A DNA stretch of 64,000 nt from Saccostrea echinata (lineage: Eukaryota): assembly GCF_033153115.1 (NCBI RefSeq), contig NW_026889801.1:6200001-6264000 (forward strand), in the 5' to 3' direction. The translations under genes were made by a program, and so were the position numbers. Below the pieces are notes generated by a model that was not told where the DNA came from, ran no database searches, and saw only the letters and a list, made by a program, of their open reading frames with translations. Below are positions 1 to 20,712 of the stretch, piece after piece. Every line of letters starts with the position of its first letter. The stretch's first letter is position 1.

Positions 1-597
1 TCCTCATTATCAACTATGTTTACTTCACCAGTAATGACGTGTCCAGCAGGACTATAGTTGTAGGGTGAAGAAGAACATGAACACGTAGGAGGATTATGTA
101 TCAGATGTTCTATATCTAGGCATTGTAGAGGTTTTTTTGTAATTAAAAAGTTTGGAAGCAATAGTCGATGTATATTTTATAAGAAATACAAGGTGTGGAC
201 TTCAACTTGAAATATGGTGGAATATAAGACGCTCTACCACTGCGCCACGTAGGCGACTAGAATGATTCGTTCTGCATGCTTCGACTATTTATATAACGAG
301 ACCACGTGACAACCAATCCTTAAATAGAATACTCTCCAAGAATTATAGTAGGACACCGGCGACAAAATATACAATAATGTATCGACATGAGCTTTCATTA
401 TTTTTCTCCCTGCAGAATGGGCGACAAAATTTACCTTACATATTGGCACTTAGTGTGCAGGCAACGATTTATGCTAATTGCTTTAATTTTTTTAAACAAT
501 ATTATTATCAGCCACATTTCGTTAGAAAGTGCACATTGGGTAATGAGTCCTTTTTAAAATTTTCTTTATCTGTTCAGTATCATCGTCAGTTAATTTA

Positions 598-910
598 GAG
601 CAGAGCAAACACGATTTTTCCTCCTGAAATCATCAGAGGCAGGACCAGGCGCCAAGGAGGAGCAAGCACCTCCGCCGACCGGCCACATCAGCCATGAGCT
701 CATTATCATGATCGGGCAAATGGAAAAAATCGTTGACAATTCAATGTTTAAATACTGGCTTGACAACCAGCACGAAAAACGTCAGCCAGCATTCTCTCAA
801 AAACTCTTGCCGACAAGGTCATTGTATCGACCATAGAACCTGCGAAATGATGACCGTAAACTAAATTCTCGTCATCGTTTAATCAACCCACTTGTCAATA
901 TTCCGCCTAG
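598..910 (-). mobile_element. Degenerate 3' fragment of a Penelope-like (Naiad-type) retroelement
   Basis: Aligns by eye with 12715-13020 (gagcaaacac...accggccac...acaaggtcattgtatcgaccatagaac...gaaatgatgac), which carries RT C-terminal coding remnants. Confidence 0.6.
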
Positions 911-1040
911 ATTCAGTAATTTTTGCACCTGAATTTTCGAAAATCTTGAATTCATTTTCACAAACAAATTTTACAACTGATATTCAACTACAAACATATT
1001 CCGAACAATGAAAAGAAAAAGGTTTTATTCCCGTCTCTCT

Positions 1041-2090
1041 AATAATGTACGAAATAAGGTGACCTCTGATCTAGATACTAATGTAAAATTTATGTTGTCC
1101 TCTGGTCTCCCTAATAATGTACAGTATAAGCTGACCTCTGTTCTCCCTAATTAGGTTCAATTTAAGGTGACCACTGGTCTCCCTAATAATGTCCAATATT
1201 CGGTGACCTTTGGTCCCCCTAATTATGTACAATATAAGGTGACCTACGGTCCCCCTAATTATGTACAATATGAGGTGACCTCTGGTTTCTTAAATAATAT
1301 ACAATATAAGGTGACCTCTGGTCTCCTTACTAATTTACAATATAAGGTGATCTCTGGTCTCCCCAGTAATGTACAATATAAGACGTCCTCTGGTTTAGCT
1401 ACGTATATACAATTTAATGTGACCTCTGGTCTCTTTAATAATGTACAATATAAGGTACATTAATATAAGGTAACCTCTGGACTCCCTTATTAGGTTCAAT
1501 ATATTGTGACCTTTGGTCTCCCTAATGATGTACAATATAGGGTGACCTCTGGACTCAGTATTTATATACAATTTTATGAGACCTGTACTCTCCCTAATGA
1601 TTTACAATATAAGGTGACCTCTGGTCTCTCCAATAATGTATAATATAATGTGATCTCTGGTCTCCCTAATAATGCACAATATAAAGGTGACCTCTGGTCT
1701 CCCTACTAATTTAGAATATTACGTGACCACTGGTCTCCCTAATAATGTACAATATAAGGTGACCTCTGGTCTTCCTAATAATGTACAATATAGGGTGACC
1801 TCTGGACTCCGTATTCATATACAACTTGATGTGACCTCTGTTGTCTCTAATGTATACTATATAAGGTGACCTCTAGTCTCCGTGTTCTTACACAACTTTT
1901 TGTTTTATACAACTTTTTTACATTATTAAAAGACCAGGGGTCACATAAAGTTGCATATAAATACGGAGACCAGAGGTTACCCCATATTGTACATCATAAG
2001 AGAGAACAGGAGTCACATAAAATTGTATATGAATGCCGAGACTAGAGGTCATCTTATATTGTACGTCAGAAGGGAGATCAGAGGACATAT
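1041..2090. repeat. 36-bp minisatellite array with an inverted degenerate arm
   Basis: Unit AATAATGTACAATATAAGGTGACCTCTGGTCTCCCT repeats over about 1041-1880 (period 36, e.g. 1741 and 1777). Reverse-complement copies (gagaccagaggt...) occur at about 1930-2090, with scattered copies at about 2510-2800. Confidence 0.9.
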
Positions 2091-5000
2091 AAAGTTGAAT
2101 ATTAAATGTGTGTTGTAAGGAGATAAGAGGTTAAAAAGTATGGCATATGAAGAATTATTTTCCCAACACAGACTCTGCTTTTAATGACACGCAAAAACAA
2201 AAAAGGTACACAATTTCTCCATATTCACTAAATTTATTTCGTCAGAATGGGGGTGTGTGTTTGGACAATTTGATTGTCTTCATAAACATGTATATGATTC
2301 TAGGAAACAATTCTCAAGGGGTCCGTGTTTTCTAAGTCTACTTTTGGTAAGTCTATTTTTTGGTTAGTATTGTTTCTCCATTTACAGATCTAGCGGGGGT
2401 AGTGATTGGAATTCAGCATCTCCCTTCCATTAAATTTTCACTCATTAAATACAAGGGGAACATCTTTTCTGTAATATCAATAAGGAGGACAGAGGAATAG
2501 CTAGAGTGTTATATTGATAAGGTCACCTATTGTGGTACGATATATTATTTAGGAGACCAGAGGTCACCTAACGTAATTTATTACCAAATCACTATTCCAT
2601 TATCTAAAAGTATCAGTGAAAAATCCAAGGAGGACACGATCTAATCCCCCTACCCTTCCCGGTGGATCTGCGCATGCAAAAACAAATGTCACCTACTCTG
2701 ATATATTGATAAGGATACCAGAGGTTTGATAGTGTGTTACTTTGATACGGTCGTGTAACATGGATTATCATAAGGGAGACCACAGGTCATCTGACGTAAT
2801 TCATTACCATATGAATTATATCATATATCTTTAAAATCTAATAGTCAATGTTGCTTGCTTTACCCCTATTGTATCTTTCCTAACATCAGATGATTATTCT
2901 TTCAAGAAATACAATTTCTGTTAGTTGTATATTACATTTGTAAAGTCTTCCAGTAGAAGGATTAACTCTACTTTCATTTTGCGGTTGCAATGCACTATAT
3001 TTTGTAGCGGAGTAAACAGGTTTGGTAGTTGTAAATGAGCAAGTGACCTTAGGTTCTAGTTGAGCGTACGTTTTATCCTTCTGCTTTTGTCACCGGAAGT
3101 ATTTACGGAAGACTATTTTCTGACAATATGTACATGAATATTTTTGCCGATGACAATATTTGCCAATGAATGACAATATTTGCAGTTTGAAGCATACTGT
3201 CACCGATCGTTCTATGTACAGGACCTTCATGACAAAATGTACCATCACACGACCGTTACAGCGAATTACAAAACACCGGTAAAGATTTCAATAGCTTGCT
3301 GCATGGCTCAATAGGGTAAACAATCTGCTCTGACAAGTATCACATTGGGTTTGAATCTTGGTCACGAGCAAAGAGCTTATCCAAGTGTGGCAGTAGATTT
3401 TACACGTAAATGTGAGTTGATTTCATGGTCTGTCTGAGTGATGAAGAAATCTGGACAAGTGGAAATGACAACACCATGAAACTCTTCAGCAATGTTGTAT
3501 GAAGCCACATATGTTTTACTTTAAATAAATGTAATATTTTTCTTTAATATAAAATGTTATATTTAATTTCATAAAATTGATTGCTCTTTTAGAAACGCAT
3601 AAATCTTCTGCACACAATTCATCTCATAGCTTCAGAGTCTTGTCACACCCGAAATATATTTTTTTTTTTTTTTGTAATTCACTTTCAAGACCCTCTATCA
3701 ATTTCAAATGGAGGGTATTTTCTGTTCTTTTGGGCAAAGGTTTCATTCTTGTCAATAAACAATAGCACCAACGGCAAGTGCTTAGATAGAATGGTCAACC
3801 TTACTCAATCCAGCATTCGAATATGTTCAAAACTGTTGTATTTTCCAAAATCTCCTCACCCACGATAAACAGGTTAGATTCTTTAAATGTATGAAAAATG
3901 AAAACATTAATGGAAAATAAGGTGTTGAAGATGGAGAGCTCAAACTATGCTAATGCTAGCAGTTTCATCTCCTGGAGCATTACTTACGACTAAGTAAAAA
4001 AAAATTAACATAGATCTAAACTCTCATCAACTGAATAAGTTTGCGATTTTGTAATTTTCTTATAAATAATTAAATTACCATTTAATCAAAGTAAATGATA
4101 AAATAAATTGCAAAAGCACTTAGTTCTTTTGTAAAACAAGACCTTAATTTAAATTTTGGGAGTTCCGAAGAAAGAAATTTGCTGGTTGTAGAGTTTATAT
4201 GTGTTATTTATAGTATTATTATTATATCATATTTATGTGTTTATTTATAATCCATAAGATGAGAGAAATTCAGAGTGGAAAGCTAGATTCCTTACTTTGT
4301 TAATTCATCAATGCTGCCCACTTTGCGCAAATAGTGTGGGGCTAAGCTCCATATCCCAAATCAGGTTCTTGGGCATATGTAATCAGGAAAATCACTTTAA
4401 ATTTATTAAATTCATGCAATTCTTTGAAATAACATAGACTACTTCTTTTTCAAAATTTGATTGTAATGTACGTTAAATTATATTTTTCTCAAAATTTGAT
4501 CGTAATGTACATTGGATACAAATAAAGCTATTAAATTTTTAACTTCTGTAATTTGTTATGCTACAATTCATAGAAAAGACCATTCTGGATCTGCATTCAG
4601 ATTTGGTTATTATTCACAAATAAAAACTTACAATAATTAAGGAAATTACAAACACAACTGCTCACTAGACTGTTACTCTGTGTCATACCATGCATGCAGA
4701 GTAACTTTCTGACCTAGATACTTGTTAGGCCAAACTGTATACCCTATCTAGCTATCAAGCTAGTTATTAAAGACCGGCGTTTTGTAATTTGCTGTTACCA
4801 GAAAAACACATTTGAATTATTGTATGTGGGTCTGACTGCACTTTTATTACATTCAAATAATATTGGTTATAGGTGGTCATCATATCAAAACTGATATGAA
4901 ATAATAATCAATTTTCCTTCTCATATTACCTTAAGATTTAGAAAGCTTTGTAAAACTTTTCATTTGTAGAATTAAAAAAGATTTCATAGCAAAATCGTTT

Positions 5001-6320
5001 CTGAGTTCGTTTTCCTTGTTGTTGCTTTTCAATTTTTTTTTATTTTGAGAAGAAAATAATATCAACCTGTCCAATAAAGACGCTGTACTTGACAGTATTT
5101 TTGGGAAAAGGTACTGTCCGATGCTGTTCTAAGTTTTGTCATTAAATTTTTTGACATATGACTGCCAGCTATATTTCTAGATCCGGTAGATAATAAATAA
5201 TACATGTATCTTTTCATATGGCCGACACGTTTACATAAAGCAAACGGCTACATACTCGAAAAAAGAACTGATAAAAACTTTACTAATAGTCGGCCGTTGT
5301 ATTTCAATTTGTTACGCTGTTTTATTATTATTATTATTATTATTACTAGAATAAGCAGTTTGTTGCTTAGAAGAAAAAAAAGGGGGGTTAGGGAGTAGGA
5401 GTAACACATCATTTCGTCAAATAACATTTTACATGTACTGATATGAGTACACTTAAGGATTTCGTTGAAAGTGGAGTAATTCATATTACGAATTCGAAGT
5501 ACTGATGAAAAATAATGTTTGTTCATTGATACAGTTGATACGTATCTTGTTATGTGCATTTTGGTATCATTCTGTTTGAAGTTGACGTTTATTTTCTTGT
5601 TTTTTCCTCAATTCTTTAATGTTTCAGATGGTTTCTTTAAATTGTAAGAAGAAAAAAAAAACCTAATTTTAAAACAATGTTCTTTAAAAACTATCTCAAA
5701 ATATAGAATGTTAGAAAATGTTTATATACTTACGTGTAAACTGATGGACAAAAGTAGAAAAGAGTTCATATTTGTTACAATCTGCATCTTTTTCAAAGAA
5801 TCCTGGAGCATGGCCCATTCAAGGAGACAGAGAATTTGTCGCTTTTTCTAATTTCTGTCAAATCAGGACGAATTCGAAAACTGTAAAATGTTATAGCAAT
5901 TTCAGACCTCAAAGATATATTTGTGTAGCATGCGATACATGTTTTTTTTTTTTTTTTTTTTTTTTTACTTTACGCAAAAGGGAACTTATCGTAAATCAGA
6001 TTTTAATGAAGTGTGATTATTTGATTTGATACGTTCATGACGATGAATTGTGAAATAATGATCAATGTAATACAAAACAGGAGCAGGTAATGATAGATCA
6101 TGAGGACATCTAGACGTTTTTAATACAGAAGTCAATCTACCTTTCAGTCTATGATCTTTCATATGACTAACTTTGTACATGTGTAACCCTGATTGCATTG
6201 TCACAATCTGAAAACTATCACAGCACGTACAAAAATATTTAAGTAGCTTTCAAATTCATCAGATTTCAATTTCCATATCCACAACTAAAACAAGTAATGT
6301 CCTATATCTCCTAGATAACG

Positions 6321-6322
<2 letters not shown>

Positions 6323-6393
<71 letters not shown>
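6323..6393. repeat. (TA)n microsatellite
   Basis: Pure TA run. Confidence 0.95.
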
Positions 6394-6398
<5 letters not shown>

Positions 6399-6849
6399 AC
6401 AAGGTGAATTTTAAAACGAAAGTAGATTTTCTACTCGTAATATATTAACTTTTGTGTCAGTTTCCTATTCTTTGCAATCGATTATTACTGAATATAGAAT
6501 TTATTCTAGTTTGGAGAATTGTGAAATCTTGTTTTATTACAAAATCTATACCAATTATATGTGTCAATCAGAGATACTTACTTGGTATATTTGTTAACAC
6601 ACATCCACTGGAGCGCACTATAGTACATATGGTTTAAACCTACCTTAGCGATTCGGTTACCTTAACTTGATCAAAGTCCTGTAAAATAAATGCTTGAGAT
6701 ATTTAAATGTACATTGTATGTCAATAAACAATTTGTGCCAAAAATGATATTTCAAAACTAAGATTAGTCTCTTTTTTAGCAAGAGAGAATGAAACATTTT
6801 TTTTTTGCGAAAGCGTATTTGCTGCCGGTTAAAAATATTTTTGCTACTT

Positions 6850-7328
6850 TTACGTTCGAGATATCATGTCGTACGAACAAGATATCGAGTCGTACGTTCA
6901 AAATAAGAAGTCGTAATTATGAAATAATATGTCGTACTCGTACACATAACATACACTAAGTCGTACATACGGCATATTGAGTCAAAGAGACAATATGTCG
7001 TAATAATGAAATACTATGTCGAACGTCCAACATAATAAGTCGCAATAACGAGAAAATTAAGTCGGAATCACGAAAAAAATAAGTCTTCCAAACGACAAAT
7101 TACGTCGTAAAAACGACATTAAAAGTCACTAAGTCGCAGAAACGAGATACTTAGTTGTATGTATATAGGTCGAAAAAACGAGTTATTAAGTTTGTACTAA
7201 AATGAGTCCTAAATACAGATAAAAAGTCGGCGAAATTATGAGATAATAAGTCGTACAACGACATAATAAATTGAACAGAGGACATTGTAAGTCATATGTT
7301 CAAGATATTAAGTCGCACAAACGACATT
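6850..7328. repeat. Degenerate ~21-bp tandem repeat array
   Basis: Recurrent (a/t)agtcg(t/c)a...acga motif at roughly 20-22 bp spacing. Confidence 0.65.
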
Positions 7329-8440
7329 ACAAGATGTGTTTGTGAAACACTGATGCCCCCGTATGACAGCTTTCAGATCAAAGTTTCTCAAATCAAGAGA
7401 TAAAAAAATGTTGGTACCCAAAGAAAGGCCTTGTGTCGAGGAATATAAGTGTGAAATTTGAAAGCCCTAAAACCAAATGTTTAAAAGTATTAGCGAAGGT
7501 TAAATTTTTTTAAAGTAAGTAAAACGTCAAGGTCCAAGTCAAATTGGGCCCCAATTAAAGGTCTTGTCACAAGTGATACACATGTTCGTGTAATGTGAAA
7601 GCCCTAGAACCAAACGTTCACATGTTATGGCCAAGATTTTGATTTTTTTAAAAGTAGGTCAAACTCCAAGGTCGGGGTCAAAAGGTCAAAGTGGTTGGTA
7701 TCCAAAGGAAGGTCTTATAACAAGGATTACATATTTGAAGAATGAAAGTCCTTGCACCAACCGTTCAAAGGTAAGGGACAAAATTAAACTTTTTCAAAAG
7801 TAGGTCAAACTCCTCGATCAAGGTCAAAGGGTCAAAGTTCTTGATATACAAAGGAAGGCCTTGTCACAAGAAATGTACATATTAAATATGAAAGCCCTAG
7901 CAACAACCGTTCAAAAGTTATGGCAAAGGTTAAAGTTTTTCAAAAGTAGTCAGACTCCTAGGTCTAGGTCAAAGTTGTTGGTATCCAAAGGAAGGTCTTA
8001 TTACAAGGAATACACCTGTGAAGTATGAAAGCCCTAGCACCAAATGTTCAAAAGCAATGACCAGGTTTTTTTTCAAAAGTAGGTCAAACTCTAAGGTCAA
8101 GGTCAAAGGGCCAAAGTTGTTGGTATCTAAAGGACGGTCTTGGCACAGGAAATACACATGTGAAGTTTGAAAGCCCAAGCACCAACAGTTCAAAAGTTAT
8201 GGGCAAGGTTAAAGTTTCATAAAATTTTGCTAAAGTGGGTCAAACTCCAACGTCAAGTTCAAAATGTTAGATATGATGGTACCCAAAGAAAGGTCTTGTC
8301 AAGGAATACACATGTGAAATATGAAAGTCATAGCTCCAACTAATCAAAAGTTATGGACAAGGTTAAAGTTTGTGCGGACAAACAGACAGACGGACGGACA
8401 GGACACAAATATACCCCCTAATCTTCAATACGGGGGCATA
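7329..8440 (+). mobile_element. Non-autonomous Helitron/Helentron-like (HINE) element with internal ~145-bp tandem repeats
   Basis: Starts ACAAGATGTGTTTGTGAAACACTGATGCCCCC. Internal repeats contain aaagtaggtcaaactcc-like motifs (~7651, 7797, 7944, 8076, 8232). Ends with a (GACA/GACG)n microsatellite and a CCCCC...GGGGGCATA hairpin, the layout typical of oyster HINEs. Confidence 0.75.
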
Positions 8441-9632
8441 GTGTCTTAATAACGACTTATACTAATACTTACGGCACAAGAAGTTGTAACAATAAGACTA
8501 TTATATTATATTATACTATTATCCTGCCGCCAGCCCCCCCCCCCCCCCCCAAAAAAAATACTCAAACATAAAGACATGAAATAGATTTTTTCCTTTTTAT
8601 TATCTTTCAAAACTTTTAGAAGAAGATATGCCAAATAGCTTTCTTTGTATTGTTGTTCTGGTGAAATTGCCTTTGCCCTTAACATAAGCAATTGCTATAT
8701 TCATTAGCTTGCATAGAAGTCTAAGTTATATTTCACAGTTTGAATTTGTCTTTTTGAATTCTTTTTATTCGAATTAGAAAACTGTTTTGTTTTGATCATA
8801 TTTAATTGCCAATATGTTAAAGGGATTGAACATAGATTCTAAAAACTTAGATAGTCCTCTCCTATACATAAGATCTTAAAAGCCATACAACATTTACAAA
8901 AGTATGGCTAGTAAACTCAATATATAAAAACACATAGAAAGTAAAAAAACAAAAGTAAATGGAATTGAAATAGAGAGAAGTACAAGGGTCAAAGATCATG
9001 CATATTGTCCCAACATGATAAAGGTGGCGGACCACAATAAAGAACATCAAAACAATGTAAACAAATACAATACAAAAGGATGTCAAAAATTTAAGNNNNN
9101 NNNNNNNNNNNNNNNNNNNNNNNNNNNNNNNNNNNNNNNNNNNNNNNNNNNNNNNNNNNNNNNNNNNNNNNNNNNNNNNNNNNNNNNNNNNNNNNNNNNN
9201 NNNNNNNNNNNNNNNNNNNNNNNNNNNNNNNNNNNNNNNNNNNNNNNNGTCAAGTGCTCTTGTGCTGGTCATAGCTCTATTAAATTATATTCTACTGAAA
9301 GAAGTTATACTACTTTGCCAACTTTTTAAAGCAAATATAAAACGTGAAGTTGCTTTAGAAATTTCACGTTATTATTCGTGCGCCGTAAAGCGATANNNNN
9401 NNNNNNNNNNNNNNNNNNNNNNNNNNNNNNNNNNNNNNNNNNNNNNNNNNNNNNNNNNNNNNNNNNNNNNNNNNNNNNNNNNNNNNNNNNNNNNNNNNNN
9501 NNNNNNNNNNNNNNNNNNNNNNNNNNNNNNNNNNNNNNNNNNNNNNNNAACGTAAGGAAAGTTTAAGAAAGCAGTGTTGATTTTTGTTCCCTGTAGTCAA
9601 CTTGTCCACGATTTTACCGGACAACCCTCGTA

Positions 9633-10707
9633 CGAGGATTGTCCCAGAAAAACGCGAACTTTTTAAATATTTCATAAACTACCTTACCAAAATTATTCAT
9701 TTTTGGCACAATGTTGGGAAATGTTATATTCGTCATTTTTACCAAATACTCTAAAGTTGGAATGTCATATGCATTTAGAAACAGCATTTAAAGGGTGTTA
9801 AATATCGGTGGTATACGCACAACAATTTCTTGACTTTCAGAATTAGCATTTCCATCTAATTTTTTCTTTATTACAAGGCTATACGGAAATATAATGTGAC
9901 AAAAATTACATCCATAGAAACTGTGCGATCTAAAGTACTTGTGTTTAAAAAATAAATAAATACTTTGACATCATAAATTACAAAAATATGATGTTATATG
10001 ACAAAACATAATTAGTTAGATATTGTCAAAAACGGCGACGTCGGGCGATAATGCGGCGCAAGAAATTATCACTCATTACTGTATGGAGCGGGTTATGACT
10101 CCTGCTCATACGGGAAAAGAGCTAGGAATGAGGGAACGACACAAATATATGTATCGAACACTTGTTTATACCTAGTAAAAGAGGTTCAAAGATAGATGGA
10201 CTGGTTATCCGATGGAAGAAGCGTTTGGTAGACCAACAAAAATGACGACAAACTGAAAAGTCTAGAGCTGGACGTCATACGTGGAGACAGTCATTAACTA
10301 TGCGAGTAGTTAAGTTTATGATCGGGGTTAGGAAATTGTCTATTAAAATAATTAATTCCTTGATTTATTCTTAACTGTAGTTCGCATGAAATTTATAACT
10401 TGGTAACTAAAAAGAAATCAAATGCAGTATCGAATTTCTGCTTCGAACGAATTTTTAAAGACGCACGATTCCTGAATAAATCCAAAACCTCCACGATCAA
10501 CGCTTTGACGTCGTTGGTGTTGCGCCGGGAGCTACTTTGAATGAGTGATTTATTAGAGAGAAAAATGTTATTTGTAAAGATATTATATTGAAATTTCTGT
10601 GAATTATGTAAAAAATGTTAATTATAGTGCATGCCAATTTTTAACTTTATAATATTAGTGAAACGAAAAATATTGAGAAAGTTCGCGTTTTTCTGGGACA
10701 ACCCTCG
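9633..10707. mobile_element. Mariner-like non-autonomous DNA transposon
   Basis: ~30-bp TIRs CGAGGATTGTCCCAGAAAAACGCGAACTTT and AAAGTTCGCGTTTTTCTGGGACAACCCTCG, flanked by TA on both sides. No transposase ORF. Confidence 0.8.
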
Positions 10708-10941
10708 TATATATAAAAATTATCCAATTTGTATTATCATTAAAATTTCACTATAATCTAGAAATTTATTAATTTTTGAAAAAAATTTCCTTATTTGCGT
10801 ACCAAAATAAATGTATTTCCTGAAAATGAAATAGACACATTTCAATGTAACCGTTTAAACTACACATGCGGAAACATTGATTAATTATTAACATTTTAAT
10901 GATTCTGGATTTTTTCTATTCATCATATAGGCCTATTTGCA

Positions 10942-11993
10942 ATGAAGAAATATATTCTAATTACTTTTTCTTTTATAGTGTATAAATTTGCTCTTTCCAC
11001 CAATCACAGGTAAAAACAGTTATTTCAATTGTTTTGCATTTTCTGAAATTGATTTCTATTTTATCAATTTCAGGTAATTCATCATGATTAATTTTAAATT
11101 TCTTTAGTCGTCAGATATCTCTTTGCTATGCAGGATATTTCTGGAGCAAACAAAATGCAACATGTGAAAGTAGGTCATTTTTGTTTTCATTATTATTGGA
11201 ATTTTGTCTCAGTGTTTTTCTTGGCTTTTTAACAATACTGAATTTCTTTCTTAATATATAGAGTGTCCTGTTGGTTACCATAATATAAACTGCTCTGAAA
11301 AGTGCAAATATCCTAGCTTTGGAGAAGATTGTCAGGGCGGGTGCAAATGTAGAAAAAATCTATGTGATTTTGTACTAGGATGCCTTGAACAGAGAAGTAA
11401 AGATACAAGACTTTTTTTTGTAATTATACCGGTTATACATGTACATGTATAATGAAAAATACTATATTTATCACTTACCTTTTTTTTTAGCTAAAAGGTA
11501 TTTTGGAACAACTATCGTATCTGATAACACTGTGAGTACCAAAGAACTAACAATACAAACAGCCAAGATGATAAGTACAGAAAAAGCGCATCAGACTAAA
11601 GCAGACTTCATTTTGTACGGTATTTTTATCTTAGTGGGAGTTTTCGTGATATTGTTTGGTGTTTTTGTCGCTACTTATCTTTATAAACAATGCTTTCGAA
11701 AAAGGCCTACTAGCAATAGATACGGCACAGTCGAATTAACTGCCATTGACAGGTACAAAGAACTGGAAAATCAGAAAATTGTGATAAATGATTCAAGTGA
11801 AAATATGTCACCAGATCCTGTCTATCTCGATCCAATTTGTGTTGAGCCACCATTTAATAACTCTGAATCAGACCAATCGTCATTGCAGAAAGCAAGTGTA
11901 TATCTAGAGGTAATCCACGGTACCAGTAGTGAGGAATCATTGCCTTCTGATGTTGAAAACTCTCCTACTGGTTATGTTGATGTCATACAGTAA
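10942..11993 (+). CDS. Small type-I membrane receptor A: EGF-like (MEGF10/SREC-type) ectodomain, TM helix, tyrosine-motif tail (~255 aa)
   Basis: Exons 10942-11009 (signal-like MKKYILITFSFIVYKFALS), 11108-11169 (CYAGYFWSKQNATCE), 11262-11396 (CPVGYHNINCSEKCKYPSFGEDCQGGCKCRKNLCDFVLGC) and 11491-11993 (stalk, TM FILYGIFILVGVFVILFGVFVATYLY, tail). All introns are GT-AG and the exons join in frame. AATAAA at about 12047. Confidence 0.85.
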
Positions 11994-12654
11994 GTTTCAG
12001 GGAATTGCTGTCAATCAGTTTGTAAATGTACTTTTTTGTATTAATGAATAAATTTTATTCTTTTTAAGTAAATACACAAAAAAGAAAAAAATGTTATATT
12101 ATGCATTGTCTGGAAAAGTTATTCGGTTTCATATTGAATAAGCATTTGAAGTATTAGCAGGCACGTAGAAATTAACCCCTCCCCCCCACTTCTTTTCTGA
12201 GAGTAGGCTTGTGCTGTTAACTATTTTTAATAAAATGAATTCAGGTAATAATTGATTTCACACTGAACCTTTTTGCTGCAGTATGGTCGAGTCTTTCCAC
12301 GTTATTGTAACTATGTAACTTTCTATCGAATATGAAAGTATGACCCCACCCCCGCAATAATTCATTGACAAGAACTTCGATTTTTGAAAAAGTTTACTCC
12401 CAAACACACTTTCTCTTAAGGTTTCACTCCGTTTAAAAACCTGGTTAGGGCAACGTCTCTTACCGCAAGGAAATTAAATAGAAACTTGATAGAAATATTT
12501 GAAACACAAGTGAAAAGCGATTGATACATGTGTATAATATTAATGTACTTTGAAACAATTACATCTGTACATACATGATAAGAAAGTAAGTGCATCCAAC
12601 CAATTTTACAGTTAAGAATTTGATACACGAAGTATATCTTTTAATACAATGATA

Positions 12655-13200
12655 TATATGGAGATAACGAACAGTATTCAAGCTCAAAAGTCCATTAAAC
12701 GATACAAAATAGGAGCAGAGCAAACACGGACCTCCAAACATAGGTGAGATCAGGTGCCATGGAGGAGTGAGCATCCCCTGTCGACCGGTCACAACCGCCA
12801 TGTGCTCCTTGTCATGATTGGGAAATAATGGAAAAATCCGTCGACAATTCAATGTGTAAATAATGGCCTAACAATGAGTATGAAAAACGTCAGTCAGCAT
12901 TTGACTCAATGATAAATTGTATTTGCTGACAAGGTCATTGTATCGACCATAGAACTTACGAAATGATGACTTTAAACGAGACAGCTGATATTCTTGTTTC
13001 ATCAACTTGTTCGTCAATAATTTACTTCGTTTTAGAAATTGTACATACGTAGAGCATGCTCTTGCGTATCGATCAACTGAGAGATATATACCCCGTATGC
13101 AGGTGATGAAGGTATATTGCTGCATAAGTAAGGGAAGTTGACAATTGAAAAGTTAAAGTCATCACGTTTGTCATATACCTTGGTTGTTAGATTACAAGCA
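12655..13200 (-). mobile_element. Penelope-like (Naiad-type) retroelement 3' remnant
   Basis: Minus strand reads TTKVYDKRDDFNFSIVNFPYLCSNIPSSPAYGVYISQLI / RYARACSTYVQFLKRSKLLTNKLMKQEY with one frameshift. This resembles the post-RT region of Penelope-like elements and is followed by the conserved 3' non-coding block. Confidence 0.75.
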
Positions 13201-14009
13201 ATCGCACTGTTAACATGATGTATGTGTTAGACTCACAATACAGACAAAGTAATAGTCAGGTTGTGAGATGAACAATAGATCCCTTATATCGTACTTAGAT
13301 TTTTCTGAGACAGCCTTAGTAAATTCGGGGTCATTTGTCTTATTACTAAAATTCTGCTCAAGGGCCATAAAATCTCGAGTATCAGAGTCATTTATCAAGA
13401 CATTTTGAGAGAACCATAGAAAACACCCTCCCCCCCCCCCCCTTTATTTGTCAAATACATATAACACAATCGAAGACAAACTATTCTACGGTTAAGTCTT
13501 CACCAATAACTTCTGATGAAATTTTTGCTTATCCAGTAATTTAAAGAATTTTAAGCATGTTTTGTTTTGTCCCCAAACTAAATAATGCTTTCAACAGGCC
13601 GAAATTCATTTATAATATACTAGTCTGCTTGCATAATATTTCCATCAAAGTTATATGTCTAATTATTCCAAAATGTATGTCAAAAGTTGATTTTAAAGGA
13701 AGATATGACTCAAGCTTAAGGCCACAAAGTTTGTAACTTTAGTTCTTTATTAAGTTCAATGATTTTAATAAATGATATGCAAATATTCCGTTTTCTACTT
13801 TTCATTTGATGTCCTTGAACATTTCCTAGAATAAGGCCATTGTTGATATTTTTGGCGCACCTTCAGCTTTACTGAAGACGTGTATTATATTAGCCAATAG
13901 CTTCTGGTTTAGCTTAGTTCTTGATTAACAGAACACATTTATTGTTTCCGTTCGTGAGAAATATTTTAAGACTCCAGCTTCAATAACGTGCATGGTTCAA
14001 GCCGCTCTC

Positions 14010-15103: not shown

Positions 15104-17448
15104 CTATAGTTCAGCGGATGCCAAGTAGTAAACTGCTTGTCTTATGCGCATTTTTATACTTTCTGGCAATTTTGAAGAACAATCTGGAAGTTCTACATTT
15201 GCTGTCCTCATTTCTTCTTTTTTATGAACAGCTGCAATCAGATCGTCAAGTTCTGTCTCCATAATATCTGTATCGTGATTATTTAAGATTTTTAAAACAT
15301 GAATATATTGAGCACAGCACTGTTCCTTCGCACTAGTTTTATCGTCTGCTACTTTCTCAGGATTAACTCCGTACAAAATAAGAATAATCAATCTTGCACA
15401 ACATTCCAATTCACCTAATGAAGATTGTACCTGCAAATGCTTTACTGCATTGTAAACTGGGGAACATCCATCTAAATTCAATGTGGAGACATTAACATCT
15501 TTACATTCAAGAAGTGTTAAAATGCATAATAATCTACTGTATCTCGGTTGTTTTGCAGCAATGTTTAGAACGGACTCTCCATCATTATCGTCATTATTTA
15601 ATATTCGCTGACTTTTTTTTCCATCTAAGAGAATCTTCAAAGTTTTTGCACATATTTCATCGGTGTTCTCTGATTTTAGGCAATGATGAAAAACGGTGGC
15701 TCCATTTCTATCCTTATATTTAACCTCTGCTTTGTTTTCAACTAGCTCTTTAACTACTGCTGTTCTTTCTTGTTTTTGCTGCACAGCTAACATTAACGGC
15801 GACATATTAAGATTGTTGCGTGCATTGATATTTGCTTTATCTTTACTCAATTTTACGACTGCTTCTGCCACAGTGCTGTCGGATCTCTCTGACATAATCA
15901 AAAGATGCAAAACTGTGTTCTTTTCTTCATCCTTAAACTCGAGAACTCGTTTCTTTATTTCTTCCATATTATTAAAAAGCATTCCATTCAGTCTTGATAC
16001 TATATTCTCACTTTTAGAACAACATTCGCCATACAAAGAAAGATAAAATTGAAAGTCAGTATTGATTTTATGTTTGCTAAGGATGCAAAACATTTTATCA
16101 ACTAAATAATGATGATTGTTAAGGCTAGCCCAGAACAAAACGGGTAGTTTCACGTTAGAACCCTCATTTTGCAGAGAGAAGAAACTTTTAGTGTCTTTGT
16201 CTCCTTTCTTTTCTAGTTCTTCACAAAAGCAATCTGAAAAAGGTTTCAATTTAAAAACGTTACAGCCGAAAATTTTCGAAAATCTTTTATTAAATGATTC
16301 ATATAAAAATCTCAAGGCAAGTTTTGATATTTGATCCTTTCTCAAAGAAGTGTATTCCTGAGCTTGAATCACATCGAAAGGAAACAAAGGAATGACTTTT
16401 TCGAAGAAATTTTCACAAAAGTAAGCCCCTACTGCCTCATAAACACTGTCGTGTACGAATTTAAACCCTCCTCCTTCGACTGCCATGAAAAATGAACCCG
16501 ACAAGTGCTGCGCATACCTTTTTAAATCCTTGAAATCTAAAGGGCTGAAACTATTAATAAGATCTGTTGATACTGCATTTATAAATTGCCTGCATGCAAC
16601 TTCGCTTTCTAGATTTAACTTTGCATGTGGATCTTGTGTCTTTAAATGCCATTCATACAGGAAAAGGACAAAGAAGAGGGTTTTGGTTTTAGAGGTTTGG
16701 TCGTTATGAACTTCATCTTCAATTTGAATTTTGAGAAATTCAATTGGATGTGAAAAAAATTTAGCACCACGCCTTCTGTATTCCTCTTTACATGCGTATA
16801 AATGGGCACAAAGGGGAAATCCTATAGGCCCCACCGCTTTAAATATATTTGTTCTGAAGTCACGACAATCACCTGGTGGTGAACGCATATGTTTTACTTT
16901 CTCTGCAAACTCAATTTGTTTTTGAAAGATTTCATTTTTTTCTTCGTCGGTTAAAGGATATTTATTTACATATTTCCTATAAGTATCATTAAATACAGGC
17001 GTTATCCTTTTCATAAAGTGACATGCATTTTCAATGACATTTTCTCGAGCAGTAATGATGAGACGCAACTCAATCATAGACTCTTCTTGTGAATTTTGTG
17101 GTCCTTGCTTTAGATAGTTTTCATATATTCTATCAAACCCCTGCCACCAATTTTCTAAATCGTAATTATCAGTTCCATAAAATACATTATCGATAAAGAC
17201 GACAGTCTTTTTATCTGCATTTAAAAGAGTAAATTCTTCCCATGATCCAAATTTTCGTAAATCCCAATTTTCCTTTTCTGCTTCGAATAGCATGTGTATT
17301 GCAGCATTCGTTTTCCCACAACCCGGAGCTCCACTCATAATGACAATATTGTATTTATCCAAGCATAATTTGGCAGATTTGTACATTTCAGTTTCAACGA
17401 AGTAGCGATTGAAAGTCTTGTAGCTTTTCATATATTTTTTCGTCTCAT
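15104..17448 (-). CDS. Terminal exon encoding the STAND-class P-loop NTPase plus ankyrin repeats
   Basis: 775-aa ORF with Walker A IVIMSGAPGCGKT, Walker B VVFIDNVF, sensor-1 LIITAR, GxP motif IGFPLC and winged-helix FKFVHDSVYE. About 5 ankyrin repeats follow (NTVLHLLI, MSPLMLAV, ATVFHHCL, ESVLNIAA, CSPVYNAV). Acceptor tttcag at 17449. Confidence 0.9.
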
Positions 17449-20400
17449 CTGAAATAAATTTGAGAGTAAAGTGATTATAATTAACTTAAATACTACCAAA
17501 ATTTCAAATACCCTTAAAATATATGTAAAAATGCATTTTGTTTGTTTGTTTGTTTGTTTGTTGTTTAACATCCCTCTCGAGAATTTTTCACCTATATGGA
17601 GACGCCGCCACTTGCCTGTGGAGGGCTGCAAATATAGACCTATACTGGCCAATGAGCAATGGTGCCTGCACCTATTGTGACACGGGGCCTCGGTTTATAC
17701 AATCTCCACGTCCCCTAGTGGGATTCGAACCCGCGACTTAAGGATTAACTCCTTACCTCGCAAGCTTAGAGCAAACGCTCTAACCACTGCGCCCCGCGGG
17801 GGACGGTTTTTTATTTAAAACAATTGAATTTACTCTATGTAATAAAACTTTCAAAAAATGTAATCTTTTCTGGCCCAATGGCCCAAAGAATAAGATTTTT
17901 CAAAGATGTCATGAAATTTTCACTAATTCTTAATAATCTCTCCCCTGAAAGAGGTCGTTGCTCTTCATGTTAACAAAATTAAATTTAATTCATATTGACC
18001 TAGTGGTTTTGGAGAAGAAGTTGAAAGTGTGAAAAGTTTACAGACAACTCACGACAGGCAGACAGACGTCGGAAAACTTTCGATCAGAAAACTCACTTAA
18101 GCCTACAGCTCAGATGAGCTAAAACATCTTCACTTCAAATTGTCTGAATACTATTTGCTCTTAAAATTCATTGTATTTATATTTTGAAACTAACCTATGT
18201 TTTCTTCTGCTAACTCTTCCTTTGTCTTTTGCACTATGAATGCTAAGAATTGCAAATTTAAAAGTTCGTTGGTTACAATATTTATTATGTCACACACCAA
18301 GGAAATATACATTTCCATTACACTAACCCGTTTCAAAAACTTATAAAATGTATCCTTCATCCTCTATTTCAATTTGTCTTTATACAATTAAACACATTCC
18401 AAAGAAATTCGGGAAAAAAAATTTGTTCAATCAAATTCTTACTATATTTATCTGTTGCTGTTCCCATTTTTATTTGTCGTCTTGTCATTTTGTCTGGAAA
18501 TGTAAACATTTACACAGTTAACTTAATCACAAAATTAATGAGGGAAATGTAAAAATGAAACAGAATTTTGTATGAGAAATATGGGTTAATTATATTATAT
18601 TTGATTTAACTCATTATTTAAATACTTGCCCTCTAAATCATGCACAACTAAGGGTTTCATTTCCTCTACAAGATAATTAGAAATACATCATTTATTTCAC
18701 CATTTTTCCACAACTAAATCATTGAGATCTTATCATTTCCTTATTGCATAGTTTTAAAGATTAAAAAAACTTCTTTTTTCATTTTTCATTCTTTTTTCAT
18801 TTTTCTTACTTTAATCCTTAGTTTTCAATGACATTCTACATTCAATATTATAAAAATAACCATAAAAAAATTAAAATATGCATAAATACCTATTTCAGAT
18901 TTCGTTTTTTCTTTAGGTTCGTCGGTTTCTTTTTCAGAACCTGTTGCTCGTTTTTTTCGATTTTTCCTCCTTCCTATTTTACACAAAAGTAAACATGTAA
19001 GTAAGTGTGTTTTTTTCTTTGTACAAGAGCAGTAGCTTGAAAACATTTTCTCAATGAGGAGGTATTAAAACTGAATTTGAGATAATTATTGATAGGCTGA
19101 TTACATTAATAAATGACCAGTAAAAGTATGTAATATTTACGCCATAAAAAGGTGAGAAGTAAAGGTATGGCAACCAGTAGAATAATTCCAATAACTGTGA
19201 GGGTAATCCATAATGCCCTGTGAAATATGGGGAACAATTTTTATTTCTATTTAATTCATTTTTAATCAGTTTTAGTTAATTCACATGTGGCATTAATTCA
19301 ATCAAAATCTTACGAAATTTTATTGTCAGTTTCACTGTTCGGCAAGAAATTACTAGGTGATGTACTGCGGCTTCCAGCAGAGGAAATTTCGTTAGTAGTC
19401 GTGTTTGTCAAGACTGAGGGGTGTTTATAACACGCCTGATCTAAAATAGGAATAGAGTTTAACGATTTATGAATAAATACATTTGTTCTTTTTTTTAATA
19501 GCTAATTACCATTTGTCATGATACTTCATGTCCTCCTTCACTGTTTGAGAATAACAACAAACATATTGTGCATTGAAAGTATAAAAAGACCCATCAATGA
19601 TTTCTCAAAATCATGCGCTCGTCATTAAAATGTACACTAAAATTCGTCTGGTTATGCACTTAAATGTCATATTCGAGAATGTAATCCTGTAATTATATAA
19701 AATCTCAAAAAGTCATATAAATAATACATATAATTTATAAATGGAGTTATTACAAACAAAAGCTATGTTCTTACATAAATAAGCTTCAGTTGAACTGTAT
19801 CTTGTTGGACAAGGTGGGTCTAAAACTGTACAATCAGTCTGGTATTGATCTTGTATTCTCGCACCATCGACGTTAAATTCTGCACAATAACCTAAAACCC
19901 ACATAAAACATTTGAATTGGAACATAACAAAAATATATACTTTTCAAATGAACATGAGTAAGATAATTGAATATCGCAANNNNNNNNNNNNNNNNNNNNN
20001 NNNNNNNNNNNNNNNNNNNNNNNNNNNNNNNNNNNNNNNNNNNNNNNNNNNNNNNNNNNNNNNNNNNNNNNNNNNNNNNNNNNNNNNNNNNNNNNNNNNN
20101 NNNNNNNNNNNNNNNNNNNNNNNNNNNNNNNNNNNNNNNNNNNNNNNNNNNNNNNNNNNNNNNNNNNNNNNNNNNNNNNNNNNNNNNNNNNNNNNNNNNN
20201 NNNNNNNNNNNNNNNNNNNNNNNNNNNNNNNNNNNNNNNNNNNNGCTTGCGACATGTTTTTACCATTAATTTTTCTTTCTGGGGCGCACACCTCGATAGA
20301 TTGATTCCTGAAAACATTAATAACGCAATGATATTTGAACTTTTCTGGAACAGCACAACTTTGGTTCTTTGCATGATATGGACAATTTTTTTCTTTGGCA

Positions 20401-20712
20401 GCCTCTTCCATTTCATTCTTGTTACGAGGACAGGTTTCGACTATCTGCATAGTTTCCAGTGACTTGGAGCAATGTCTATCATCAAGGAAAAGACCATCCT
20501 AAAGAAATGTATTTGTAACAGATTACTCTAACTCTCATAATAAAACCATACAAATGTCTGTAAATTTCAAAGTAAAAATCCATTGTCCCAAATTCAGAAA
20601 GAAAAAAAAATTATCTTAACATCTTTAAAGCATATTTACTGCACAATACCTTCACATAAAGTAACAGGATGACAGCAGAAAACCACTGTTTGTGTTGCAT
20701 GGTGTTTACCAT
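15104..20712 (-). CDS. Transmembrane STAND-NTPase/ankyrin receptor (~1060 aa): signal peptide, Cys-rich ectodomain, S/T stalk, TM, nSTAND3-like NTPase, ankyrin repeats
   Basis: Exons 20712-20650, 20498-20264, 19891-19775, 19440-19314, 19217-19141 (TM ALWITLTVIGIILLVAIPLLLTFLW), 18973-18890 (RRRKNRKKR), 18665-18630 (GC donor), 18493-18443, 18242-18195 and 17448-15104 total 3183 nt and join in frame. A 12-nt micro-exon near 18329-18340 is possible. Confidence 0.75.
17540..17800 (-). mobile_element. tRNA-derived SINE
   Basis: On the minus strand: GGCGCAGTGGTTAGAGCG (A box) and GGGTTCGAATCCC (B box), with 3' tail ...GTGAAAAATTCTCGAGAGGGATGTTAAACAAC(AAAC)n. The same tail occurs at 45385-45420. 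Confidence 0.75.
17830..18125 (+). mobile_element. HINE/Helentron-like fragment
   Basis: ggttttggagaagaagttgaaagtgtgaaaagtttacagac...gatcagaaaactcact...agctcagatgagctaaaa terminal hairpin. Related ends occur at about 24400-24510 and 27018-27070. Confidence 0.6.

What the first reader, a model, noticed from the sequence alone, without database searches (positions are those of the whole stretch)
15104..20712. Cell-surface receptor fused to an NLR-like STAND NTPase-ankyrin module
Seen: ten exons splice in frame into signal peptide, 10-Cys ectodomain, S/T-rich stalk, a ~25-aa hydrophobic helix, the basic stop-transfer RRRKNRKKR, a short linker, a P-loop NTPase (Walker A/B, sensor-1, GxP, HD motif) and ankyrin repeats. 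Established: STAND NTPases (NLRs, Apaf-1, plant NB-ARC proteins, bacterial Avs antiphage proteins) are normally cytosolic switches built as effector-NTPase-repeat sensor. Inference: here the N-terminal effector slot is taken by a TM helix and an extracellular domain. That implies either outside-in activation of a STAND switch by an extracellular ligand, or inside-out clustering of the ectodomain once the ankyrins sense a cytosolic ligand. I know no characterised animal receptor with this architecture. It is the best candidate for an undescribed system in this window.
Basis: partly seen in the sequence, partly recalled or inferred. Interest (0 to 1): 0.93.

Follow-up and report, generated by a model that had tools for sequence, protein, structure and literature searches.

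The report
Oyster membrane-anchored STAND NTPase-ankyrin receptor gene
This rock-oyster gene really does join a secreted cysteine-rich domain and a membrane helix to a cytosolic NLR-like switch (nSTAND3 NTPase plus ankyrin repeats), but it belongs to an oyster family already catalogued by computer analysis, and a membrane-bound NLR has already been studied in a sea cucumber.

Summary
On the minus strand, ten exons (20712-15104) read in frame with AG acceptors and GT donors, plus one GC donor. They encode a signal peptide, a 10-Cys ectodomain, an S/T-rich stalk, a TM helix, RRRKNRKKR, a linker of about 75 aa, an nSTAND3 NTPase (Pfam 1.5e-18) and ankyrin repeats. The N gap (19980-20244) lies inside intron 2 and no coding sequence is missing.

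Spliced RNA contigs from a public run show every intron removed and link the ectodomain and TM exons to the STAND exon. NCBI splits the locus into two genes (LOC133204308 and LOC133204307). Seventeen homologues of 1017-1111 aa, two of them from Crassostrea virginica, have the same fused architecture. A paralogue keeps all ten exons under purifying selection.

There are caveats. The only exon 2/3 junction assembled uses a donor 28 nt upstream, which shifts the frame. A second isoform skips the TM exon.

The novelty claim is overstated. Kaur et al. 2021 defined nSTAND3 partly on these oyster proteins and listed "cysteine-rich-region+TM+...+nSTAND3+Ankyrin" architectures. Sea cucumber AjNLRC4 (Ig ectodomain, TM, cytosolic NACHT) has been characterised experimentally.

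The ectodomain has no Pfam match and no clear structural match, and it occurs in at least 150 copies in this genome. The scan also noted a similar architecture elsewhere in this genome (s1-803054).

The parts
20650..20712 (-). Exon 1: start codon and signal-peptide-like hydrophobic N-terminus (21 aa)
   Evidence: Translation and donor GT. The junction 20649|20497 is seen in an X1 contig. KD11 is 2.35.
20264..20498 (-). Exon 2: first 6 Cys of the 10-Cys ectodomain. An alternative donor lies at 20292.
   Evidence: tblastn of full-length homologues, 42-48% identity. There are at least 150 copies in the genome and 751 representative proteins in the library. X1 uses donor 20292, which shifts the frame.
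19980..20244 (.). Assembly gap, inside intron 2
   Evidence: The exon 2 donor is at 20263 and the exon 3 acceptor at 19892. Homologue residues are contiguous across the gap. An RNA contig skips it.
19775..19891 (-). Exon 3: Cys 7-9 of the ectodomain
   Evidence: The junction 19775|19440 is seen in X1.
19314..19440 (-). Exon 4: Cys 10 (YQACYKH) and the S/T-rich stalk
   Evidence: The junctions are seen in X1.
19141..19217 (-). Exon 5: transmembrane helix (77 nt). It is skipped in one X1 isoform.
   Evidence: KD19 is 2.85. AF2 predicts a helix at residues 177-208 of P0121. X1 shows both the inclusion joints 18972|19140 and 19216|19313 and the skipping joint 18972|19313.
18890..18973 (-). Exon 6: polybasic stop-transfer RRRKNRKKR and an acidic/basic linker
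   Evidence: The junction 18890|18665 is seen in X1.
18630..18665 (-). Exon 7: 12-aa linker exon with a GC donor
   Evidence: The GC-AG junction 18630|18493 lies in the same X1 contig that reaches the STAND exon. The NCBI model XP_061196020.1 reads through this donor.
18443..18493 (-). Exon 8: linker with the conserved TTDKY motif. NCBI's 812-aa model starts here.
18195..18242 (-). Exon 9: linker
15104..17448 (-). Exon 10: nSTAND3 NTPase with its helical/winged-helix module, a helical spacer, ankyrin repeats and the stop codon
   Evidence: Pfam PF20720 at 1.5e-18, and Ank_2/Ank_4/Ank. Invariant residues include Walker A GxxGCGKT, Walker B D, GPIGFP and HDS. The AF2 model has pLDDT 91. Foldseek's best match is EfAvs5 9jap.

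Best explanation
This is one ten-exon gene of the oyster Saccostrea echinata. It encodes a type I single-pass membrane protein of about 1,060 aa. The outside part is an oyster-specific 10-Cys domain on an S/T-rich stalk. The inside part is a short disordered linker, an nSTAND3-clade STAND NTPase (P-loop domain plus helical and winged-helix domains) and ankyrin repeats.

It belongs to a tandemly expanded oyster family, and the current annotation splits it into two genes.

The mechanism below is inferred by analogy with Avs5, NLRs and Apaf-1; it is not shown here. The nucleotide-bound NTPase module is held closed by the C-terminal repeats. Ligand engagement releases it, either by the ectodomain outside or by the ankyrins inside, and nucleotide-dependent oligomerisation follows at the membrane. 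There is no recognisable effector domain, so the output is probably induced proximity or recruitment of partners through the ankyrin or linker regions. Alternative splicing can remove the TM exon or break the frame, which may limit how much full-length receptor is made.
For: All ten exons are in frame. The Pfam nSTAND3 and Ank matches are above their cut-offs.

Spliced contigs of run X1 show all nine introns removed. One contig runs from the STAND exon through exons 9, 8 and 7 into exon 6.

All 17 homologues of 1017-1111 aa have the signal peptide, the same ectodomain, a TM helix, nSTAND3 and Ank. These include C. virginica LOC111105635 and LOC111104457. They map colinearly onto the window.

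A paralogue on C39 keeps all ten exons. Its dN/dS is 0.13 and 0.26 for the ectodomain exons and 0.23 for the STAND exon.

Ectodomain exons and STAND exons lie in a same-strand tandem array at C52:5.90-6.22 Mb.

The AF2 model of the NTPase module has pLDDT 91. Its best PDB matches are EfAvs5, SAMD9, ZAR1 and wheat resistosomes, NLRP14 and NOD2.

Walker A, Walker B Asp, TAR, GPIGFP and HDS are invariant or nearly so across 56 family members.
Against: NCBI annotates two genes: XP_061196020.1 (229 aa) and XP_061196019.1 (812 aa).

In X1 the only assembled exon 2/3 junction uses donor 20292, which gives a frameshift and a stop in exon 3. No contig covers 20264-20289. The isoform that skips the TM exon has a higher contig depth (8.7) than the one that includes it (4.7).

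The evidence is a chain of short contigs, not one molecule spanning from the ectodomain to the STAND exon. X1 is labelled only as 'RNA?'; I infer that it is RNA from the spliced joints.

There are no data on protein, localisation, ligand or nucleotide binding. Walker B reads D-N, without a second acidic residue, so hydrolysis may be weak. No downstream effector is identifiable.
Confidence: 0.72

Rival explanations
1. There are two independent neighbouring genes, as NCBI annotates. One is a small ectodomain-TM protein that ends by reading into intron 7. The other is a separate cytosolic nSTAND3-ankyrin protein that starts at the Met in exon 8. Any joining is occasional read-through splicing.
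For: The NCBI models XP_061196020.1 and XP_061196019.1. The S. cucullata orthologue model also starts at MTRRQIKMG. Most proteins carrying this ectodomain are short TM proteins of 200-400 aa.
Against: An X1 contig splices exon 7 to exon 8 through a GC-AG intron, and no contig covers intron 7. The exon 8/9 residues (TTDKY...) are internal linker sequence in all full-length homologues. The paralogue conserves the ten-exon order. Ectodomain and STAND units appear to duplicate together in the C52 array. The start-at-exon-8 models are what a gene caller would output if it missed a GC donor.
Confidence: 0.12
2. The locus is transcribed and spliced, but in this species it is mostly non-productive. 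The dominant mRNAs carry frameshifts (donor 20292, TM-exon skipping) and are degraded or give only truncated secreted peptides, so little or no full-length receptor exists.
For: X1 shows only the 20292 donor at exon 2/3. The TM-skipping junction has a higher depth than inclusion. Both changes introduce early stops.
Against: All ten exons are open. dN/dS is 0.13-0.26 against the paralogue, including the 28-nt segment VCAPERKIN, which is identical at the protein level. Logan contigs drop minor variants and depth here is only 5-10, so the productive isoform may simply not have been assembled. Only one sample was informative. The NCBI model XP_061196020.1 uses donor 20264.
Confidence: 0.13

Closest known systems
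Crassostrea receptor-like TRADD-N/nSTAND3 proteins (Kaur, Burroughs, Iyer & Aravind, eLife 2021, PMC8195603)
   Same: Both are oyster lineage-specific expansions with a cysteine-rich extracellular region, a TM helix, and intracellular nSTAND3 plus ankyrin repeats. [quoted passage not shown] Their nSTAND3 alignment contains stretches identical to P0046 and P0088, the C. virginica homologues of this gene.
   Different: This gene and its full-length homologues have no DED or TRADD-N by Pfam, and only about 90 aa lie between the TM helix and the NTPase. The proteins are about 1,060 aa, against 2,650 aa for the listed nSTAND3 example. I could not test whether their 'cysteine-rich region' is the same 10-Cys domain. 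S. echinata shows only one NCOA6-type TRADD-N hit.
AjNLRC4, a membrane NLR of the sea cucumber Apostichopus japonicus (as described in PMC13133943)
   Same: It is an animal single-pass membrane protein with an extracellular recognition domain and an intracellular STAND NTPase, and it has been studied experimentally as a surface receptor.
   Different: Its ectodomain is Ig rather than the 10-Cys domain, its NTPase is NACHT rather than nSTAND3, ankyrin repeats are not reported for it, and it is from a different phylum. No sequence relationship was tested.
Bacterial Avs5 (SIR2-nSTAND3-TPR antiphage STAND; EfAvs5 PDB 9jap)
   Same: It carries the same Pfam NTPase family, PF20720. It is the best structural match of the AF2 NTPase-module model (Foldseek E 2.9e-6, TMq 0.50). 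Both have C-terminal helical repeats.
   Different: Avs5 is cytosolic, with an N-terminal SIR2 NADase effector. In this gene the N-terminal position holds a linker, a TM helix and an ectodomain, and there is no enzymatic effector.
SAMD9/SAMD9L, and plant and animal NLRs (ZAR1, NRC, NOD2, NLRP)
   Same: They share the fold of the NTPase module, with nucleotide-binding, helical and winged-helix domains.
   Different: There is no Pfam match to NACHT or NB-ARC. The repeats are ankyrin, not LRR. The protein is membrane-anchored.

Membership tests
STAND NTPase, nSTAND3 clade (PF20720) | Profile match above the curated cut-off | tested here: met
   67.4 bits against a cut-off of 27.2, E 1.5e-18, profile positions 1-154 of 155. 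Homologues score 71-85 bits.
STAND NTPase, nSTAND3 clade (PF20720) | Walker A GxxxxGK[ST] and Walker B hhhhD | tested here: met
   GAPGCGKT and VVFIDN are present. G39, G42, G44, K45, T46 and D86 are invariant in 56 sequences. The residue after the Walker B Asp is Asn, not an acidic residue.
STAND NTPase, nSTAND3 clade (PF20720) | Helical and winged-helix domains after the P-loop domain | tested here: met
   AF2 pLDDT is 91.3 and pTM 0.86. Foldseek probability is 1.00 to EfAvs5, SAMD9, ZAR1, NOD2 and NLRP14 over 390-480 columns. GPIGFP and HDS motifs are conserved.
STAND NTPase, nSTAND3 clade (PF20720) | C-terminal superstructure-forming repeats | tested here: met
   Ank_2, Ank_4 and Ank are above their cut-offs at residues ~540-655 of the exon. 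PDB ankyrin matches span ~500-750.
STAND NTPase, nSTAND3 clade (PF20720) | N-terminal effector or adaptor domain (typical tripartite layout) | tested here: not met
   There is no Pfam domain between the TM helix and the NTPase in the window's gene or in four full-length homologues. The linker is about 75-90 aa and low in complexity.
NLR in the strict sense (NACHT or NB-ARC plus LRR) | NACHT or NB-ARC profile match and LRR repeats | tested here: not met
   None of these families appears at E <= 1. The relationship is at the level of fold only.
Crassostrea Cys-rich-TM-DED-TRADD-N receptor-like expansion (Kaur et al. 2021) | Intracellular DED and NCOA6-clade TRADD-N | tested here: not met
   There is no DED or TRADD-N hit at E <= 1 in the full-length homologues. 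The linker is too short to hold them.
Crassostrea Cys-rich-TM-DED-TRADD-N receptor-like expansion (Kaur et al. 2021) | The same cysteine-rich extracellular domain | not testable with these tools
   Their ectodomain sequences are not in the held supplements. A profile search with this ectodomain listed no TRADD-N or DED proteins among its best 120 hits. The genome shows only one NCOA6 TRADD-N hit.
Type I single-pass membrane protein | N-terminal signal peptide, one TM helix, positive-inside flank | tested here: inconclusive
   The hydrophobic N-terminus has KD11 2.35, the TM segment has KD19 2.85, and RRRKNRKKR follows immediately. AF2 predicts helices at 3-23 and 177-208. No SignalP or TMHMM-type predictor was available, and there is no experimental topology.
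Membrane NLR of the AjNLRC4 type | Extracellular Ig domain and intracellular NACHT | tested here: not met
   There are no Ig or NACHT hits. Only the general layout is shared.

The most novel reading that the evidence does not exclude
The oyster 10-Cys/TM/nSTAND3/ankyrin proteins could be a distinct class of cell-surface pattern receptors. In this reading, binding of an extracellular ligand (a microbe or a non-self cell) to the rapidly expanded ectodomain directly drives nucleotide-dependent oligomerisation of a membrane-tethered STAND module. That would be a 'transmembrane resistosome/inflammasome' working without DED, TRADD-N or any other known adaptor. Splice isoforms lacking the TM exon would supply soluble decoy ectodomains.
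Probability: 0.2. Interest if true: 0.8.

Novelty: new member of a known kind. Interest (0 to 1): 0.45.

Why it matters
It corrects a split annotation: LOC133204308 and LOC133204307 are one gene.

It documents, with RNA junctions and paralogue conservation, the simplest form of the oyster receptor-like nSTAND3 architecture, in which nothing but a short linker lies between the membrane and the STAND switch.

The ectodomain occurs in at least 150 copies in this genome and has no Pfam match. No clear structural match was found for it either, although that search was weak. It appears to be a shared extracellular cassette joined to many different cytoplasmic tails.

This makes the family a tractable case for asking whether a STAND switch can be driven from outside the cell. 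The question has so far been addressed experimentally only for the unrelated sea cucumber AjNLRC4.

Tried and rejected
A 31-nt candidate exon near 19540 (tgaaggagg...) was rejected. It breaks the frame, homologues need no residues there, and X1 joins 19775 directly to 19440.

The structural searches for the ectodomain gave nothing usable. Foldseek against PDB had its best E at 2.8. pdb_via gave Z 2.5 to brazzein. pdb_via_wide was dominated by the TM helix, with Z no higher than 3.5.

The ESM Atlas search returned only unnamed mollusc clusters.

A word-indexed search with the ectodomain region of P0046 found only 4 proteins. A profile search (A3) found 248 proteins, and the best 120, which were the ones listed, were all short and carried no informative Pfam domain.

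A sequence search of the STAND exon against PDB found only ankyrin proteins. NCBIfam gave nothing meaningful.

Runs X2-X4 gave no splice information for this gene.

Exons were searched by reference, and the NCBI model P0121 and natural homologues stood in for the N-terminal half.


Full report
ORGANISM AND LOCUS
The 780-aa translation of exon 15107-17446 (minus strand) is 100% identical to NCBI XP_061196019.1 (LOC133204307) of the rock oyster Saccostrea echinata. The window is G000:C52:6200001-6264000.

THE OBSERVATION
Reading the minus strand and checking it by script gives ten exons:
- 20712-20650
- 20498-20264
- 19891-19775
- 19440-19314
- 19217-19141
- 18973-18890
- 18665-18630
- 18493-18443
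- 18242-18195
- 17448-15104

All acceptors are AG. All donors are GT except a GC donor after exon 7. The phases match throughout and there is one terminal stop.

Translated exon by exon, they encode:
- a hydrophobic N-terminus (MVNTMQHKQWFSAVILLLYVK);
- a domain with exactly ten cysteines;
- a stalk with 38% Ser+Thr and NxS/T sites;
- a 25-residue hydrophobic helix (KD19 2.85);
- RRRKNRKKR;
- about 75 residues of charged linker;
- the large exon.

Pfam places the large exon in nSTAND3 (PF20720, E 1.5e-18, 67.4 bits against a cut-off of 27.2, whole profile), followed by ankyrin repeats. A 31-nt piece near 19540 that might look like an exon is not one.

THE ASSEMBLY GAP
The gap 19980-20244 lies between the exon 2 donor (20263) and the exon 3 acceptor (19892).
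- Six full-length homologues align to exon 2 and exon 3 with contiguous residues (for example, query 25-95 then 93-128), so no coding sequence is hidden.
- An RNA contig skips the interval.
- The paralogue has a plain 186-nt intron at this position.

ONE GENE OR TWO?
NCBI annotates two genes. LOC133204308 (XP_061196020.1, 229 aa) has the signal peptide, ectodomain, stalk and TM helix; it skips exon 6 and reads through the GC donor of exon 7 to a stop. LOC133204307 (812 aa) starts at a Met in exon 8.

Three lines of evidence argue for one gene.

(i) RNA. Run X1 is about 98.5-99.5% identical to the window in the exons. It holds contigs with joints at 17448|18195, 18242|18443, 18493|18630 (the GC-AG intron), 18665|18890, 18972|19140, 19216|19313, 19440|19775, about 19891|20292 and 20497|20649. 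All have canonical ends. The first four share one contig depth (9.71), so I read them as a single contig that runs from the STAND exon into exon 6. No contig covers intron 7. The spliced joints show that X1 is RNA, although its record does not say so.

(ii) Homologues. Of the 120 best relatives, about 100 are 750-830 aa calls on the single large exon from genomic contigs, and these say nothing about the N-terminus. All 17 proteins of 1017-1111 aa carry the signal peptide, the same ectodomain (YHCVIN...EVCAP...CTEFNV...AYKYPDCY), a TM helix, a basic flank, a linker with TTDKY, nSTAND3 and Ank. They include C. virginica LOC111105635 and LOC111104457 and transcript-sized Logan contigs.

(iii) Conservation.
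- A paralogue at C39:1497896-1521753 keeps all ten exons in order on one strand.
- Its dN/dS is 0.13 (exon 2), 0.26 (exon 3) and 0.23 (exon 10), at dS 0.3-0.65.
- On C52, STAND exons (6058881, 6102254, 6144439, 6185533, 6216601, plus a broken copy at 6086822) and ectodomain exons (5900477 ... 6078330, 6130085, 6197213, 6220265) lie on the same strand. Most of the STAND exons have an ectodomain exon upstream, which suggests the unit duplicates as a whole.

CAVEATS FROM THE RNA
The only exon 2/3 junction assembled in X1 uses a donor at 20292 (GAG|GTGTGC), 28 nt upstream of the homology-supported donor at 20264. The depth arithmetic shows that no contig covers 20264-20289. This junction shifts the frame and gives a stop 23 codons into exon 3.

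A second isoform joins exon 4 directly to exon 6, skipping the 77-nt TM exon (depth 8.7, against 4.7 for inclusion). On an otherwise productive mRNA this would yield a soluble ectodomain ending 12 codons into the shifted frame.

Contigs drop minor variants, depth is low, and only one sample was informative. The fraction of productive mRNA is therefore unknown. No single molecule spanning exon 1 to exon 10 was seen.

THE STAND MODULE
An AF2 model of the first 420 residues of exon 10, built with 55 homologues, has pLDDT 91.3 and pTM 0.86. It shows a five-stranded P-loop core followed by helical and winged-helix-like parts.

Foldseek's best PDB matches are EfAvs5 SIR2-STAND (9jap, E 2.9e-6, TMq 0.50), human SAMD9, wheat and ZAR1 resistosomes, NLRP14, NOD2 and NRC proteins.

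Across 56 family members the following are invariant or nearly so: GxxGCGKT, the Walker B Asp (always followed by Asn), TAR, GPIGFPLCA and F-HDS.

nSTAND3 is also the NTPase of bacterial Avs5 (PMC12931631). No NACHT or NB-ARC match appears.

THE ECTODOMAIN
It has no Pfam match. Exon 2 alone finds at least 150 open copies in this genome and 751 cluster representatives in the protein library. The best 150 are 69-406 aa, and those I read are signal peptide, ectodomain and TM helix with unrelated tails. Named hits are all from Saccostrea or Crassostrea/Magallana.

AF2 on XP_061196020.1, with 59 relatives, gives pLDDT of about 97 over residues 31-145. The model is an alpha/beta domain with a four-stranded sheet.

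Foldseek and VIA-align found no convincing match. The wide search was dominated by the TM helix, so I make no claim that the fold is new. The Atlas gave only unnamed mollusc clusters.

COMPARISON WITH WHAT IS KNOWN
Kaur et al. [quoted passage not shown] They discuss these as receptor-like proteins that might sense adhering pathogens or cells.

[quoted passage not shown] Their nSTAND3 alignment holds XP_022295718.1, whose displayed stretch is identical to P0046, and a row identical to P0088. So the family was already used to define nSTAND3.

The present gene and its full-length relatives lack DED and TRADD-N. They are the minimal version: ectodomain, TM helix, linker, nSTAND3 and Ank. I could not test whether the 'cysteine-rich region' is the same domain.

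Separately, sea cucumber AjNLRC4 (extracellular Ig, TM, intracellular NACHT) is described as an experimentally studied membrane NLR (PMC13133943). The statement that no characterised animal receptor has this layout is therefore too strong.

The scan also noted a Cys-rich ectodomain, TM, STAND and ~50-ankyrin gene elsewhere in this genome (s1-803054). I did not check it.

MECHANISM (INFERRED)
By analogy with Avs5, NLRs and Apaf-1, the NTPase module should act as a nucleotide-dependent oligomerisation switch held in check by the repeats. Here it is tethered under the membrane, and the usual effector position is occupied by the linker, TM helix and ectodomain. Whether the trigger is extracellular (ectodomain) or cytosolic (ankyrins) is open. 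Output is most simply induced proximity or partner recruitment. The D-N Walker B suggests slow hydrolysis. None of this is shown.

VERDICT
The feature is real and the architecture is correct. The gene is mis-annotated as two genes. It belongs to a computationally known but experimentally untouched oyster family. Interest is moderate.

TOOLS NOT AVAILABLE OR STEPS LEFT OUT
The joined spliced protein was not built for any search or fold.

Noticed in passing
window 17500-18100 (intron 9): A tRNA-like SINE (ARAGORN: 17709-17804 minus, scored as 'tRNA-Pyl cta') and neighbouring repeats. Contig depth there is 370-14,000 in all four runs, so this is a dispersed, expressed repeat family and not part of this gene.
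   Followed up: partly
G000:C39:1502289-1518139 (intron 6 of the paralogue; loci L001-L003): The paralogue's intron 6 is about 16 kb, against 224 nt here. It carries at least five extra copies of an exon-7-like 36-nt segment (EMKPLVVQD...). This is a tandem repeat that includes a mini-exon and could supply alternative linker exons.
   Followed up: no
window 18972/19313 and 20292: Two frame-breaking splice variants appear in run X1: skipping of the TM exon, and an alternative exon 2 donor 28 nt upstream. They may represent regulated unproductive splicing or a soluble ectodomain isoform.
   Followed up: partly
G000:C52:5.90-6.22 Mb and G000:C52:16.55-16.69 Mb, G000:C3:2.06-2.09 Mb: Clusters of ectodomain exons and of nSTAND3 exons. 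Some nSTAND3 copies sit in open frames of about 1,600 aa, which would be larger relatives. One copy at C52:6086822 has five stops and is a pseudogene.
   Followed up: no
P0187, P0205 (library proteins with the same ectodomain): Their cytoplasmic tails end in a segment that looks SAM-domain-like by eye. This suggests the ectodomain-TM cassette is combined with several different intracellular modules. It was not checked with Pfam.
   Followed up: no
window 11439-11993, 26148-26657, 27591-28064, 53625-54734 (+): The other long ORFs in the window have no significant Pfam match; the only hit is a sub-threshold collagen match for the last one. Another scan note calls the flanking genes EGF-type receptors. 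I did not examine this.
   Followed up: partly
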